From IMG/VR virus record IMGVR_UViG_3300041411_000178, positions 1 through 64,000 of that record: a stretch of 64,000 nucleotides of DNA; one strand, 5' to 3'. Below are positions 37,477 through 41,472 of the stretch, one piece after another; the stretch's first letter is position 1, and every line of letters starts with the position of its first letter. The notes beneath the pieces were generated by a model. That model worked only from the letters and a program-made list of their open reading frames with translations, ran no database searches and was not told the origin of the DNA. The translations under genes and the position numbers were made by a program.

Positions 37477-40400
37477 ATGGACACAACTGAATCTGACAAT
37501 ACATCAGCCGAAGCACGGCTAAAGTTTGCAAAAGAGTTAGTGGAGTATTTGGGTGCTCAGAATCTGCCACCTGAGCTGATCGACGATCGCAAGAACCGGG
37601 TGGATTGGGAAAAGCGTACCGAAGACGAATTGGTCATGGCTCACTTCAATGAAGACAGCCTGAGCAAGATCAAGACCGTTCGTTTCCTTAAGGACTTTCC
37701 TCGTTACCAGGCGGCCGCTGACCGCACTACCAAGAACACCAGCTTTATCCGGACGGCAGAGATCTTCCGGCAGCAGGGGATCAAGAACTACTTCTTCCTG
37801 CTGCAACTGAACAACCCGGCTTTGATCGGGGTGGACCCGTACGACGAGAACTTGACCAACGAACAGAAGGTCATGGTCATGCACGAATGTGAGACCAACT
37901 TCTGGTATTTCCTTCGTGAGGTTTGTAAGCTGCGCGCTGATCGTCAGTTCTTGGCTAACCGGGGTAACATCAGTTTCATCTGGAACTACCTGAACCACAT
38001 CACCCAGTACATGATCATGCCTCGTCAACAAGGCAAGTACCAGGACGATAACGATAAGGTTCGTAAAGCAGACGGGACCTGGGTGCGTATCGGTGATCTG
38101 CAAGCGGGTGATCAAGTCATCGACCGTTACGGTAAAGAGTCCACGGTAATTGGTATCCATGCTCAAGGCATTAAGCGCTTGTACCGGGTTCACACCAGTG
38201 ACGGTCGTTATGTCAGCGCAGGACCTGAGCACCTCTGGACATTGGCAGATCATAGCCGTACTGTAAATGACGATCCAGTCTGGGACGATTACACTACCGC
38301 AGAAATGATCACCAAGCTCAAGGATGATGTAAAGCTCGAACTCCCGTTGATCGAAGCGGAGAAGGGCGTCAAGCAGAACCTGGCAATTGACCCTTATGTG
38401 ATGGGCACACTTATTGGGGGTCAACGCATTGGTGGTTTCATCCTCATTAAGAAAGTCTCTGAGTCTGCCGATGCCTGGATTGAAGAGAACCTGCCTGAAA
38501 GCCTGGAGCTGGTGAAGAAGGGCAATCGTCGCGAGATCCATTCAACCGACGAGAATGTCAAGATCAGCTTCGATCCGGACATGGGTCTGCCGGCTAACTA
38601 CCTGGAAGGGGCTCTGGAAGATCGTCTGGCCGCGCTGCAAGCGTTTCTCGACCAAGGAGCAATCGGTGAGGAGGGTGTGGTCTACAACACCACCAGCAGG
38701 CTTGTAGGCGGTCACGTTCAGTACCTGGCCCGTAGCTTGGGCGGTACGGCTTCCAAAGCGGGTAGCAAGATTACAGTTACACTGCCGCATTCGATGGCAC
38801 TGTTCAAGTACAAGCATGTTGAGGAAGAGTTCGTTTTCCCTAACCGTTTGTTTGTAGAGCGCATCGAGTATCATGGTGAAGCACCGTGCACCTGCATTGA
38901 GGTGGATAACGAAGATCACCTTTATGTCACCGACGACTTCCTGGTCACGCACAACACGGTCTCCGTGCAAGTGATTGCGTTCTGGTTGACGTACATCATG
39001 GGGCGTGGCTACAAGTCTCACCTGGTAACCCTGAAGTCGGATAACCGTGCTCAGTTCATTGACGCGATCAAGAAGATCCGGACATGTCTGCCGAAGTACC
39101 TGGTTAACCCAACCTGGAAGGACAAGGACGCGGGTAACTACCTGACGTATAAAGCGTTTGGGGAGGAGCACGTTAACACCCTAACCATCTCAGTACCCCA
39201 GATGGGTGAAGACGCCGCAGGCGACCTTGGACGGGGTCTCACGGTAGGTACCACGAACTACGACGAGCCAGGTTACATCAACTGGATCGAGGCGATCATC
39301 AACGGATGCTCTCCTTCTGCTTTGACAGAGATGGAGATTTGTCGTGACAGCGGTATTCCTTACGGGATCAGTTACATCACGACACCGAACACGACCCTGC
39401 ACCCAAGTGGCGCATTCATGTTTGAGAAACTGATGACGTCGACGGAGTGGCGTGAGAAGTTCTTCGACTCGTACAGCGAGAGTCACCTGAAGATGCGCTT
39501 GTTGAAGGCGTCTCCTCGTAAGACCACCTCGCCGTCTGTGGCCCTTGTGTATAACTACCTGCAACTGGGTAAAGACAAGGCCTGGGTACGCGAGACGATC
39601 GACAGCCTGAACCTCAGCCTTGCTAAGGCCAAGATCGACTTGCTCCTCATGTGGGTTGAAGACGGTGAGAACCGTGTGTTCGATGACATCACTCGTGAAG
39701 CGATTAACAACGTGAAGCGGGATAAGGTCTGGAGTAAGGAGTATCGTGACAGTGGTCTGTTTATCGACTTCTTTGTCACGCAGCAAGAACTGCTGGAGAT
39801 GGCGAAGAAGAGTTATAATGACTTCTTCCTCATTGGGGTGGATACCTCGTCGGCTATCAACAAGGATGCTTGTACGCTGATTATCCGCAGTATGAAGACT
39901 GGTAAGGTCATTGGGGTGGGTCGTTATCAGTTGGCATTCTTGGACGACGTGACGGGCATTATCGTCGACATGTTGGCCACTTTGGAAAACAGCCTGCTGG
40001 TGATTGAGCGTAACTATGCTCACCACATGATCGACAACCTGCTGGTTATGCTGCCGGCCAAGGGGATGGACCCATTCACTCGCATCTACAACACGGTCTT
40101 CCAAGATCCTGTTAACCATGCGAAGGAATACGAGGCAGTGCAGCACACCAAGTTTGCCCACCGCAGTAAGAGTTTCTACCTGAAGTACAAGCAGTTCTTC
40201 GGGTTCATCACGACCTCTACTTCACGTCAAGTGTTGTATGGCCTGATTCAGGAAGCTGTGGGTAACACAGGGTATGGCCTGCACTATGATCGGCTTGCTG
40301 ATGAGTTGATCAACCTCAAGACCCGAGGCGACCGGATTGACCACGATAGCAAACAGCACGATGACTTGGTTATCGCCTGGCTGCTGACGTACTGGTTCAT

Positions 40401-40740
40401 TAAGCTGGGTATGAACAAACCGATGTACGGAATCCCGACTGGGATTGCCCTCACGGAAACTCGTAACCTGCTCGATGCCGGTAAGCAGAAGAATGCTCCT
40501 GAAGTTGACCCAAGTGTTGTTTCGTTCTTGGACAACATCAAGAAACGTGTACAGAAGTTGACGGACGAGTTGTTGAACACCAACGACAATATCCTCGCCA
40601 TGAGGTTGGAGGCTGAGATCAACAAGCTCAGCAGACTGCTCCCACCTGAAACGGCTAAACTCCTGACCGTGGATACCTTGATCGAGGAGGCTAAGCTCGA
40701 AAGGGCTAAGCGTATCTTGAGAGAACGTAAGCGCGCATAA
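37477..40740 (+). CDS. terL: Terminase large subunit, intein-containing
   Basis: FWYFLRE; Walker A PRQQGK/T split by the intein; GRGLT, YDEP Walker B; nuclease IGVDTS and HDDLVIAW. Confidence 0.92.
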   Translation: MDTTESDNTSAEARLKFAKELVEYLGAQNLPPELIDDRKNRVDWEKRTEDELVMAHFNEDSLSKIKTVRFLKDFPRYQAAADRTTKNTSFIRTAEIFRQQGIKNYFFLLQLNNPALIGVDPYDENLTNEQKVMVMHECETNFWYFLREVCKLRADRQFLANRGNISFIWNYLNHITQYMIMPRQQGKYQDDNDKVRKADGTWVRIGDLQAGDQVIDRYGKESTVIGIHAQGIKRLYRVHTSDGRYVSAGPEHLWTLADHSRTVNDDPVWDDYTTAEMITKLKDDVKLELPLIEAEKGVKQNLAIDPYVMGTLIGGQRIGGFILIKKVSESADAWIEENLPESLELVKKGNRREIHSTDENVKISFDPDMGLPANYLEGALEDRLAALQAFLDQGAIGEEGVVYNTTSRLVGGHVQYLARSLGGTASKAGSKITVTLPHSMALFKYKHVEEEFVFPNRLFVERIEYHGEAPCTCIEVDNEDHLYVTDDFLVTHNTVSVQVIAFWLTYIMGRGYKSHLVTLKSDNRAQFIDAIKKIRTCLPKYLVNPTWKDKDAGNYLTYKAFGEEHVNTLTISVPQMGEDAAGDLGRGLTVGTTNYDEPGYINWIEAIINGCSPSALTEMEICRDSGIPYGISYITTPNTTLHPSGAFMFEKLMTSTEWREKFFDSYSESHLKMRLLKASPRKTTSPSVALVYNYLQLGKDKAWVRETIDSLNLSLAKAKIDLLLMWVEDGENRVFDDITREAINNVKRDKVWSKEYRDSGLFIDFFVTQQELLEMAKKSYNDFFLIGVDTSSAINKDACTLIIRSMKTGKVIGVGRYQLAFLDDVTGIIVDMLATLENSLLVIERNYAHHMIDNLLVMLPAKGMDPFTRIYNTVFQDPVNHAKEYEAVQHTKFAHRSKSFYLKYKQFFGFITTSTSRQVLYGLIQEAVGNTGYGLHYDRLADELINLKTRGDRIDHDSKQHDDLVIAWLLTYWFIKLGMNKPMYGIPTGIALTETRNLLDAGKQKNAPEVDPSVVSFLDNIKKRVQKLTDELLNTNDNILAMRLEAEINKLSRLLPPETAKLLTVDTLIEEAKLERAKRILRERKRA
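38038..38955 (+). mobile_element. Class 3 intein (306 aa) in the TerL Walker A motif, with a degenerate LAGLIDADG domain
   Basis: Inserted between GK and T; ends THN/T; Trp-Cys-Thr triplet (EHLW, TCIEV, VTHN); DPYVMGTLIGG and LQAFLD remnants. Confidence 0.88.
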
Positions 40741-40791: not shown

Positions 40792-41472
40792 TTATGGCGA
40801 GCTGTGGGTAACCAAGATGCTCTTGATGATGCAGACGGAGCCGTCATCGACTGGGGTGTCTGGGGAATAATCAACCTGGTTGTACACACCGCCGTGGAAT
40901 TGGAGTAATTGGCGTTGCCAGGAGGAATCCATTTGCAGGTTGCACGGTTCGAATGCTACACCGTTGCAAGTCCCGTTGATCTGTACTTTACCGCTACGGG
41001 TTACCCCGATGTTCAGTTTGAACTTGGCACCCAGGGGTACATCACGCTGAATGCTGACGTTAACGATGTCTGGGTTAACAAAGCTCTTGCGGAAGCCGGC
41101 CGTGATATTGCCGCGATTCCAGAACACCTTGAGCGGTGGGGTGGTGGCGTCTTTGACATGGATCTGTCCGATAACCACCTTGTCAGCATGGTTAACTTTG
41201 GAAAGGATCATCTCCTGACGATTCCAATGACGGTCAGCACTGGAGAGTGACCAGTACTCGGCTTCTTTCCATTCACAGCGTGTACGTTTGGTGCTCTTGC
41301 TCGACGCACCTTGAGTAGGGGCTGACAACTGGAGGGAACCGTCTTCCAGTAAACAAGCAACGTTGGGATAAAGATCCAGGATTTCAAGAGCGGGCATTTC
41401 GAGGGCTACCAACGACTTCGCCGAGACGGGCAAAGGGGTAGCGATGGTGAAAGTGCTAAGGTCAATAGACAT
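40792..41472 (-). CDS. Polysaccharide lyase family 7 (alginate lyase-like)
   Basis: RTRCEWKE, VIGQIH and FHGGVYNQ correspond to the PL7 motifs RxELR, QIH and YFKAGxYxQ. Confidence 0.85.
   Translation of the reverse strand: MSIDLSTFTIATPLPVSAKSLVALEMPALEILDLYPNVACLLEDGSLQLSAPTQGASSKSTKRTRCEWKEAEYWSLSSADRHWNRQEMILSKVNHADKVVIGQIHVKDATTPPLKVFWNRGNITAGFRKSFVNPDIVNVSIQRDVPLGAKFKLNIGVTRSGKVQINGTCNGVAFEPCNLQMDSSWQRQLLQFHGGVYNQVDYSPDTPVDDGSVCIIKSILVTHSSP

What the first reader, a model, noticed from the sequence alone, without database searches (positions are those of the whole stretch)
38038..38955. Tyr-initiated class 3 intein splitting the terminase Walker A motif
Seen: the intein starts YQDDND (no Cys, Ser or Ala at position 1), ends THN before Thr+1, and has the Trp(B12)-Cys(F4)-Thr(G5) triplet. 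The LAGLIDADG motifs lack the usual acidic residues (GTLIGG, AFLDQG). Known: class 3 inteins initiate through the block F Cys and are phage-associated. Inference: Tyr1 is a rare N-terminus. Retention despite a probably dead endonuclease suggests domestication, for example redox- or temperature-gated control of DNA packaging through the CTC cysteines.
Basis: partly seen in the sequence, partly recalled or inferred. Interest (0 to 1): 0.7.

Follow-up and report, generated by a model that had tools for sequence, protein, structure and literature searches.

The report
Class 3 intein in phage terminase
The large terminase gene of this EL-like jumbo phage is interrupted, inside its ATP-binding loop, by a self-splicing class 3 intein with an inactivated homing endonuclease; this is a typical member of a large, already known kind of phage intein, and nothing here shows it acts as a regulatory switch.

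Summary
Window 38038-38955 (+) encodes a 306-aa intein inside a 1087-aa ORF (37477-40740). The ORF is the large terminase of an EL-like jumbo phage. Intein-less homologs read PRQQGK|TV, so the insert lies exactly between Lys and Thr of Walker A.

All sequence marks of a class 3 intein are present: no Cys/Ser/Thr at position 1, His B10, Trp B12, Cys F4, Thr-His-Asn and Thr+1. These marks are invariant in 114 intein-bearing homolog clusters.

Position 1 is unconstrained in this family, with 11 residue types and Tyr in 9 of 114. Tyr1 is therefore uncommon but not meaningful.

The middle domain has a confident LAGLIDADG fold. Both catalytic Asp are missing in the whole EL-like clade (75 of 75) but intact in 17 distant relatives.

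In the EL-like clade intein and extein co-diverge, which indicates vertical inheritance. In sister Vibrio/Aeromonas-type clades the intein is gained, lost and swapped.

The first Cys of "CTC" is not conserved (51 of 114), and several relatives have deleted parts of the endonuclease domain. The evidence fits a fixed selfish element that only precise excision could remove, not domestication. The phage EL terminase carries the orthologous intein. Verdict: new member of a known kind, low interest.

The parts
37477..40740 (+). Terminase large subunit precursor ORF (1087 aa plus stop) with the intein in frame.
   Evidence: ORF listing. phrog_2 'terminase large subunit' E 1.9e-40. 64.5% identity to phage EL gp011, annotated terminase large subunit. 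The model of the intein-less homolog P0116 matches T4 gp17 at E 1e-16, plus T7, D6E, Sf6 and HK97 terminases.
37477..38037 (+). N-extein (aa 1-187). It ends with the first part of Walker A, PRQQGK (38020-38037).
   Evidence: phrog_2 E 1.8e-36 on this piece alone. Junction defined by comparison with intein-less homologs. Lys-1 is invariant in 121 of 121.
38038..38955 (+). Class 3-type intein, 306 aa (Tyr1 to Asn306).
38038..38343 (+). HINT splicing domain, N-terminal part (intein aa ~1-102), holding blocks A and B.
   Evidence: Profile match to class 3 DnaB inteins 6bs8/6rix and to gp41-1_WCT 6riz over these residues. Beta-rich secondary structure in the model.
38230..38238 (+). Block B His65-Leu66-Trp67, i.e. 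B10 His and the class 3 signature B12 Trp.
   Evidence: His and Trp are invariant in 114 of 114 intein-bearing homologs.
38344..38841 (+). LAGLIDADG homing-endonuclease-derived domain (intein aa ~103-268), catalytically degenerate. Boundaries are approximate.
   Evidence: Profile match to the PI-SceI endonuclease domain at E 1.5e-9. Foldseek matches to TliVMA/PI-SceI/PhoVMA inteins and to I-DmoI. No Pfam LAGLIDADG hit, unlike distant relatives that carry PF14528. dN/dS 0.12-0.36.
38389..38421 (+). Degenerate LAGLIDADG motif 1 (DPYVMGTLIGG). The catalytic Asp position is absent.
   Evidence: Aligned to GVLLGDG in relatives with an intact motif. Helix 119-127 in the model.
38626..38661 (+). Degenerate LAGLIDADG motif 2 (LAALQAFLDQGA). 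The catalytic Asp is replaced by Gly.
   Evidence: Aligned to GLMDTDG in relatives with an intact motif. Helix 193-205 in the model.
38842..38955 (+). HINT splicing domain, C-terminal part (intein aa ~269-306), holding blocks F and G.
   Evidence: Profile match to the C-terminal blocks of 6riz and 6bs8. Strands 271-289, 295-298 and 302-305 in the model.
38893..38895 (+). Cys286 (block F position 4), the predicted initiating nucleophile of class 3 splicing.
   Evidence: Invariant in 114 of 114. Its role is inferred from PMC2807308 and PMC5222942. The neighbouring Cys284 (38887-38889) is not conserved.
38947..38955 (+). Block G Thr304-His305-Asn306, i.e. the class 3 signature Thr, the penultimate His and the cyclising Asn.
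   Evidence: All three are invariant in 114 of 114.
38956..40737 (+). C-extein (594 aa). It starts with Thr+1 (38956-38958), which completes Walker A as GK-T. It holds the rest of the ATPase domain and the nuclease domain.
   Evidence: Thr+1 in 120 of 121 homologs. Fold of the intein-less homolog. No sequence-level PDB or PHROG hit for this piece alone.

Best explanation
This is a class 3 intein with a HINT splicing domain and an inserted, catalytically dead LAGLIDADG domain. It sits between Lys187 and Thr494 of the Walker A motif (PRQQGK|T) of the large terminase of an EL-like jumbo phage.

Inferred mechanism, taken from the class 3 paradigm:
1. The precursor folds.
2. Cys286 (block F4), positioned with His65 and Trp67, attacks the Lys187-Tyr188 peptide bond and forms a thioester-branched intermediate.
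3. The N-extein is passed to the hydroxyl of Thr+1.
4. Asn306 cyclises and releases the intein.
5. An O-to-N shift restores ...PRQQGKTVSVQ..., that is, an intact P-loop.

Only the spliced protein can bind ATP and package DNA, so splicing competence is under strong selection.

Inferred history: the element arrived by homing into this classic P-loop site and became fixed in the ancestor of the EL-like clade. Its endonuclease then lost both catalytic Asp, and the intein has since been inherited vertically. It persists because only a precise deletion would leave a working terminase. The endonuclease-derived domain is kept foldable, probably because a misfolding insert would hamper splicing, and it is slowly shrinking in some lineages. 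Residue 1 (Tyr here) is a non-catalytic, freely varying position.
For: Boundaries and site: intein-less homologs read PRQQGK|TV.

Signature: His B10, Trp B12, Cys F4, Thr G5, His G6 and Asn G7 are invariant in 114 of 114. Thr+1 is present in 120 of 121.

Fold:
- pLDDT 96.8.
- Foldseek matches endonuclease-bearing VMA/PI-SceI inteins at E ~1e-12, and class 3 DnaB inteins with target TM 0.73-0.80.
- The profile hits 6riz, 6bs8 and 6rix (WCT-grafted and class 3 inteins) at E 4e-16 to 1e-12.

Host protein is a terminase.

Dead endonuclease: both catalytic Asp are missing in 75 of 75 EL-like rows and present in 17 distant relatives.

Vertical inheritance within the EL-like clade:
- Intein and extein distances correlate at Spearman 0.80 over 2775 pairs.
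- No pair has an intein more similar than its extein.
- The intein/extein distance ratio is tight (median 1.93).
- 40 of 72 tree splits are shared, against 0.2 under label shuffling.

No intein-less allele appears among the EL-like homologs found in 5.8 billion proteins.

Selection: dN/dS is 0.03-0.10 for HINT, 0.06-0.10 for the extein and 0.12-0.36 for the endonuclease domain.

Decay: relatives carry inteins of 270, 255-257, 285 and 156 aa, with deletions inside the endonuclease domain.

Position 1 shows at least 35 changes on the tree.

The mechanism and the 'classic' Lys|Thr P-loop site are taken from PMC2807308, PMC5222942 and PMC5050341.
Against: - No biochemical evidence of splicing exists for this protein or, in the papers I could read, for any EL-like terminase.
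- The class 3 pathway is inferred from sequence signatures only.
- The endonuclease-derived domain is under clear purifying selection (pN 0.17-0.26 against pS 0.60-0.69). Pure decay would not predict this, so a residual function cannot be excluded.
- Synonymous sites are near saturation, so the dN/dS values are rough.
- Synonymous divergence is higher and GC3 lower in the intein than in the extein. This is not fully explained.
Confidence: 0.85

Rival explanations
1. Domesticated switch. The intein is kept because conditional splicing gates terminase activation and hence DNA packaging, for instance through a reversible disulfide or metal site involving Cys284 and the catalytic Cys286, or through temperature.
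For: - A class 3 DnaB intein is reversibly trapped by a disulfide between its catalytic F4 Cys and a non-conserved second Cys (PMC6195587).
- The intein is universal in the EL-like clade.
- Its non-splicing domain is under purifying selection.
- Cys284 is kept in the query's sub-lineage, P0001-P0010.
Against: - Cys284 (F2) is Cys in only 51 of 114 clusters, with at least 14 changes on the tree, and is Ala/Ser/Thr in many EL-like phages. Any such gate is not a property of the family.
- There are no other Cys in the intein.
- Intein-less terminases work in sister phages, so the gate is dispensable.
- Universal retention is equally explained by the need for precise deletion.
Confidence: 0.09
2. 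The LAGLIDADG-derived domain still has a nucleic-acid function. It could be a non-canonical nuclease or nickase, or a sequence-specific DNA binder that helps mobility or does another job.
For: - The fold is confidently predicted and complete.
- dN/dS is 0.12-0.36, well below 1.
- Several motif residues are conserved (P..Y.MG, G.P..YLEG, DR...LQ.F.D).
Against: - Both metal-binding Asp are missing in all 75 EL-like rows.
- There is no sign of horizontal movement in that clade, whereas clades with intact motifs do show it.
- Several lineages have deleted large parts of the domain.
- It is the fastest-evolving part of the protein, at ~35% identity where the exteins are ~75%.
Confidence: 0.05
3. 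The insert no longer splices. Either the ORF is a dead terminase, or the protein works with the insert in place.
For: No direct evidence of splicing.
Against: - Every catalytic splicing residue is invariant across 114 clusters that have diverged to ~45% identity.
- HINT dN/dS is 0.03-0.10.
- The insert splits GK|T of the P-loop, so an unspliced ATPase is implausible (PMC5050341 makes the same argument for TerL).
- The ORF is intact and is the ortholog of the gene annotated as terminase large subunit in phage EL.
Confidence: 0.01

Closest known systems
Pseudomonas phage EL gp011 (terminase large subunit) intein, and its orthologs in Erwinia phages RisingSun/Joad, Shewanella phage FishSpeaker, and Klebsiella/Vibrio/Aeromonas jumbo phages.
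   Same: - Same host protein (64.5% identity overall).
- Same GK|T site and same WCT/THN/Thr+1 residues.
- Same degenerate LAGLIDADG domain.
- EL even has the same CTCIEVDN block F.
- From my own memory, not checked here: the EL inteins were catalogued in InBase as PhiEL ORF11/39/40.
   Different: - The intein is only 46% identical to EL's.
- Position 1 is Tyr here and Gln in EL.
- The intein is 306 aa here against 313 aa in EL.
Mycobacteriophage TerL1-a inteins, the 'classic' P-loop insertion between the invariant Lys and Thr, and class 3 TerL inteins of actinobacteriophages (PMC5050341; bioRxiv 10.1101/2025.01.02.630785).
   Same: A phage large terminase is interrupted in Walker A at Lys|Thr. 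The architecture is HINT plus LAGLIDADG. Splicing is argued to be needed for ATPase and pentamer assembly.
   Different: - The terminase family is different (jumbo-phage type, no Pfam terminase hit).
- The tested mycobacteriophage TerL inteins had active endonucleases and sporadic distribution. Here the endonuclease is dead and the intein is fixed in a whole clade.
Class 3 DnaB inteins: MP-Be DnaB (PMC2807308), and Msm DnaBi1 and Mch DnaB1 with crystal structures 6bs8 and 6rix (PMC6195587, PMC7664689).
   Same: WCT triplet, no N-terminal nucleophile, Ser/Thr+1 and P-loop insertion. These are the best sequence and fold matches for the splicing domain.
   Different: - Those structures are mini-inteins or come from other host proteins.
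- They start mostly with Ala. Across a sample of 137 related class 3 inteins, position 1 is Ala in 89, Pro in 20 and Tyr in 0.
- The redox partner Cys48 of DnaBi1 has no counterpart here.
PI-SceI and archaeal VMA inteins (1vde, 7qsu, 7qst).
   Same: Overall two-domain architecture of HINT plus LAGLIDADG. These are the best Foldseek matches to the whole model.
   Different: Those are class 1 inteins (Cys1) and PI-SceI is an active endonuclease. Sequence identity is 13-16%.

Membership tests
Class 3 intein (Tori et al. 2010, PMC2807308) | No Cys, Ser or Thr at intein position 1. | tested here: met
   Tyr1. The boundary is fixed by intein-less homologs.
Class 3 intein | WCT triplet: Trp at B12, Cys at F4, Thr at G5. 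| tested here: met
   Trp67, Cys286 and Thr304. Each is invariant in 114 of 114 homolog clusters.
Class 3 intein | Block B His (B10), penultimate His, C-terminal Asn, and Ser/Thr at +1. | tested here: met
   His65, His305, Asn306 and Thr+1.
Class 3 intein | HINT fold related to solved class 3 inteins. | tested here: met
   Profile E 5e-13 to 6bs8 and 1e-12 to 6rix. Foldseek target TM 0.73-0.80. Model pLDDT 96.8.
Class 3 intein | Obligate block F Cys nucleophile with a block F branched intermediate, i.e. the mechanism itself. | not testable with these tools
   Needs a splicing assay with a Cys286Ala mutant and trapping of the branched intermediate.
Active LAGLIDADG homing endonuclease | Two LAGLIDADG helices in an alpha-beta-beta-alpha-beta-beta-alpha fold. 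| tested here: met
   Profile match to the PI-SceI endonuclease domain at E 1.5e-9. Foldseek to PI-SceI, VMA inteins and I-DmoI.
Active LAGLIDADG homing endonuclease | A conserved acidic residue at the end of each LAGLIDADG motif, which is the metal ligand. | tested here: not met
   MGTLIG-G aligns with GVLLGDG, and AFLDQGA aligns with GLMDTDG. Both Asp are absent. No Pfam PF14528 hit.
Active LAGLIDADG homing endonuclease | Evidence of mobility: sporadic presence, or intein/extein incongruence. | tested here: not met
   In the EL-like clade the intein is in 75 of 75 rows and co-diverges with the extein. Mobility signals are seen only in clades with intact motifs.
Phage terminase large subunit (host protein) | Walker A GK[TS] is restored by removing the insert. 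| tested here: met
   PRQQGK + TVSVQ matches PRQQGKTVTAQ of intein-less homologs.
Phage terminase large subunit (host protein) | N-terminal ATPase plus C-terminal RNase H-like nuclease fold. | tested here: met
   Tested on the intein-less homolog P0116 (52% identity to the query, BLASTP local alignment). Its model (pLDDT 84) matches full-length T4 gp17 at E 1e-16, ATPase domains 2o0h and 4znl, and nuclease domains 5m1f and 3c6a. phrog_2 E 5e-55.

The most novel reading that the evidence does not exclude
In EL-like jumbo phages the endonuclease-dead intein is no longer merely selfish. One reading is that it is retained as a post-translational gate that delays or conditions terminase activation, for example through oxidation or metal binding at Cys284/Cys286 in the query's sub-lineage. 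Another is that its LAGLIDADG-derived domain, which is still under purifying selection, has acquired a new DNA-binding role in packaging.
Probability: 0.1. Interest if true: 0.55.

Novelty: new member of a known kind. Interest (0 to 1): 0.25.

Why it matters
Practically, the intein explains three things:
- why this terminase is ~300 aa longer than its intein-less relatives;
- why Pfam finds no terminase domain;
- why public records call orthologs 'helicase', 'DarB-like antirestriction' or even 'gyrA'.

Biologically, the family is a clean natural series of the homing cycle at a single site. Sister clades hold active endonucleases with gain, loss and replacement. One large clade holds a fixed, endonuclease-dead, vertically inherited intein. 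Some lineages are shrinking toward mini-inteins.

The series also gives a natural mutational scan. It shows that residue 1 of a class 3 intein tolerates at least 11 amino acids while the WCT/H/HN/T+1 set is immovable.

If splicing turned out to be conditional, it would be a post-translational checkpoint on DNA packaging. Nothing here requires that.

Tried and rejected
- Pfam on the whole ORF and on the intein gave only a sub-threshold Hom_end_hint hit (E 0.02-0.15). Standard domain scans miss both the intein and the terminase.
- The C-extein alone gave nothing against PDB sequences or PHROGs. A 7-sequence profile of intein-less homologs gave nothing against PDB either. Terminase identity was therefore settled by structure prediction of an intein-less homolog plus Foldseek.
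- Megablast against phage genomes found only a 74% match to an EL-like phage. Protein-level search was needed.
- Tori & Perler 2011 (PMC3133030), which probably lists the EL inteins, is not held. The supplement of PMC2807308 is not held. A 'PhiEL' text search found nothing. The statement that the EL inteins are catalogued in InBase therefore rests on my memory.
- I rejected 'Tyr1 is functionally special' and 'CTC is a conserved redox motif'.
- I rejected recent horizontal transfer into the query lineage.
- I could not inspect model coordinates, so Cys286-to-junction distances were not measured.
- dN/dS used Nei-Gojobori pairwise estimates with near-saturated dS. No codon-model likelihood test was run.
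Full report
**Observation.** The window holds one long ORF at 37477-40740 (+), 1087 aa. The flagged stretch 38038-38955 translates in frame to 306 aa that begin YQDDND and end VTHN, followed by TVSVQ. A search of 5.8 billion proteins returned 484 relatives. Seven of the best 120 are 775-780 aa long and lack the insert. They read PRQQGK|TVTAQ where the query reads PRQQGK|Y...THN|TVSVQ.

**Host protein.** Pfam finds no terminase domain in the ORF or in the intein-less homologs. The C-extein alone hits nothing by sequence. Other evidence identifies the protein:
- The N-extein matches PHROG 2, 'terminase large subunit', at E 1.8e-36.
- The ORF is 64.5% identical to phage EL gp011, annotated terminase large subunit.
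- An AlphaFold model of the intein-less homolog P0116 (pLDDT 84) matches full-length T4 gp17 at E 1e-16. It also matches T7, D6E, Sf6 and HK97 large terminases, and separate ATPase and nuclease domain structures.

The host genome is a 224,004-bp viral record with terminal repeats. It is an EL-like jumbo phage.

**Intein anatomy.** A profile of 113 intein segments (alignment A1) matches three groups of solved structures:
- the WCT-grafted gp41-1 intein 6riz at E 4e-16;
- the class 3 DnaB inteins 6bs8 and 6rix/6riy at E 5e-13 to 7e-12;
- the PI-SceI endonuclease domain at E 1.5e-9, through the profile's middle part.

The AlphaFold model is very confident (pLDDT 96.8, pTM 0.93). Foldseek places the whole model with the endonuclease-bearing VMA and PI-SceI inteins at E ~1e-12. 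It places the splicing domain with class 3 DnaB inteins at target TM 0.73-0.80.

**Class 3 signature.** All sequence criteria of Tori et al. (PMC2807308) are met:
- no Cys/Ser/Thr at position 1 (Tyr1);
- His65 (B10);
- Trp67 (B12);
- Cys286 (F4);
- Thr304 (G5);
- His305 and Asn306;
- Thr+1.

In 114 intein-bearing homolog clusters, whose whole-protein identity to the query falls to ~41%, each of the intein residues is invariant (114 of 114). Thr+1 is present in 120 of 121. HINT dN/dS against the four closest relatives is 0.03-0.10, as low as the extein at 0.06-0.10. Splicing competence is clearly under selection. The pathway itself can only be inferred. It would run from F4 Cys attack through a block F branched intermediate, transfer to Thr+1, Asn cyclisation and an acyl shift (PMC2807308, PMC5222942).

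**Tyr1.** In this terminase family position 1 is Met 23, Leu 22, Ala 16, Phe 12, Glu 12, Tyr 9, Gly 7, Pro 5, Gln 4, Asp 2 and Cys 2. It needs at least 35 changes on the extein tree, and Tyr appears in at least four separate places. EL itself has Gln1.

A library-wide search with the intein found 9461 representative clusters at E ≤ 0.001. I could delimit 137 related class 3 inteins in other proteins. Their features:
- position 1 is Ala 89, Pro 20 and Tyr 0;
- 97 of 137 sit after GK;
- all end in THN.

Tyr1 is therefore uncommon among class 3 inteins generally. Here it is one state of an unconstrained site, as expected for a residue that is not the nucleophile.

**Endonuclease domain.** Seventeen distant relatives (inteins of 346-360 aa, Pfam PF14528) keep GVLLGDG and GLMDTDG. 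The query and all 75 rows of the EL-like clade align MGTLIG-G and AFLDQGA at those places, so both catalytic Asp are lost. The domain is the fastest-evolving part of the protein, at ~35% identity where the exteins are ~75%. It is not neutral, however: dN/dS is 0.12-0.36 and pN is far below pS. Several relatives have deleted parts of it, leaving inteins of 270, 255-257 and 285 aa and one of 156 aa. The domain is therefore dispensable in evolution.

**History.** On the extein tree the EL-like clade (75 rows, support 100) is uniformly intein-positive and endonuclease-dead. Sister clades mix intein-less, dead and intact states, with at least 5 presence changes and at least 8 endonuclease-state changes.

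Within the EL-like clade:
- intein and extein distances correlate at Spearman 0.80 over 2775 pairs;
- no pair has an intein more similar than its extein;
- the distance ratio is tight (median 1.93, 5-95% range 1.65-2.59);
- 40 of 72 tree splits are shared, against 0.2 under label shuffling.

In the Vibrio/Aeromonas-type clades the pattern differs. Near-identical exteins carry very different inteins; for P0095 and P0096 the extein p-distance is 0.077 and the HINT p-distance is 0.57. Inteins more similar than their exteins occur only among the Vibrio/Aeromonas-type rows P0077-P0103, nearly all of which keep both LAGLIDADG Asp. This is the textbook homing cycle, and the query sits in the 'fixed, endonuclease decaying' stage.

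**Regulation idea.** The intein has only two cysteines, Cys284 and Cys286. Cys284 (F2) is Cys in only 51 of 114 clusters, with at least 14 changes on the tree, and many EL-like phages have Ala or Ser there. A redox trap between the catalytic F4 Cys and a second, non-conserved Cys is documented for the class 3 Msm DnaBi1 intein (PMC6195587). The idea is therefore legitimate for the query's sub-lineage. It is untested, and it is not needed to explain retention. Any imprecise deletion in the P-loop would kill an essential enzyme, and selection to keep the insert foldable accounts for the moderate constraint.

**Comparison with the known.** A Lys|Thr P-loop insertion in a large terminase is called 'classic' (PMC5050341). 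Class 3 inteins are abundant in phage terminases (bioRxiv 10.1101/2025.01.02.630785) and were proposed to be of phage origin. The orthologous intein is present in phage EL gp011, with 46% intein identity at E 1e-82. From memory, it was catalogued in InBase. The finding is thus a new member of a known kind. The only mildly new points are family-level: the freedom of residue 1, the clade-wide fixation with a dead endonuclease, and turnover at the same site in sister clades.

**Limits.**
- No biochemistry was available.
- Model coordinates could not be inspected.
- dS is near saturation.
- Trees were built with FastTree.
- The wider class 3 sample is the top 150 hits only.

Noticed in passing
Own genome outside the window: G000:C1 ~74,093-74,827 (+) (loci L004/L005) and ~206,777-207,556 (-) (loci L003/L006): There are two more class 3-type inteins in the same phage genome. 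Each has Ala1, H.W in block B, a block F Cys, and VTHN|T. Each is inserted after GK of a P-loop (GGGK|A and GSGK|A) in helicase-like ORFs of 792 and 1011 aa. They are 30-42% identical to the terminase intein over the matched stretches. Phage EL also shows three places matching the query.
   Followed up: partly
window 40792-41472 (-): An alginate lyase gene (Pfam PF08787, E 1.8e-36) lies directly downstream of the terminase, convergently. The same neighbour is present in the contigs of the close relatives P0002-P0004. It hints at an alginate-producing host such as a pseudomonad.
   Followed up: partly
window 38038-38955 versus the rest of 37477-40740: The intein has lower third-position GC than the exteins (0.59 against 0.69). 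It also has higher synonymous divergence from close relatives (pS 0.62-0.70 against 0.45-0.49). Weaker codon-usage selection on the intein, or an older or foreign origin, could explain this. It was not resolved.
   Followed up: partly
Public phage records matched (e.g. AJ697969, NC_070950, OM810292): Intein-bearing orthologs of this terminase are variously annotated as 'putative ATP-dependent DNA helicase', 'DarB-like antirestriction', 'gyrA: DNA gyrase subunit A' or 'hypothetical protein'. The intein is probably misleading automatic annotation.
   Followed up: no
Proteins P0121 (aa 156-844) and P0239 (aa 132-423): P0121 carries two class 3-like inteins directly abutting at one GK|T site. It reads GK|F...VTHN|C...VTHN|T, so the +1 residue of the first intein is Cys1 of the second. 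P0239, which has a PRQ.GKT-type P-loop, carries two mini-inteins three residues apart: PRQ|A...ITHN|TGK|L...VTHN|T.
   Followed up: partly
Homolog clusters P0077-P0107 (Vibrio/Aeromonas/Klebsiella-type jumbo phage terminases): Several divergent intein lineages occupy the same GK|T site in nearly identical terminases. For P0095 and P0096 the extein p-distance is 0.077 and the HINT p-distance is 0.57. For P0087 and P0092 the values are 0.039 and 0.415. Intein-less alleles (Vibrio phages VP4B and pTD1) nest among intein-bearing ones. The site appears to be one of ongoing intein replacement.
   Followed up: partly
Homologs P0090 and P0098: Two family members have Cys at intein position 1 while keeping the full WCT triplet. 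This resembles the few WCT inteins with an N-terminal nucleophile mentioned in PMC2807308.
   Followed up: no
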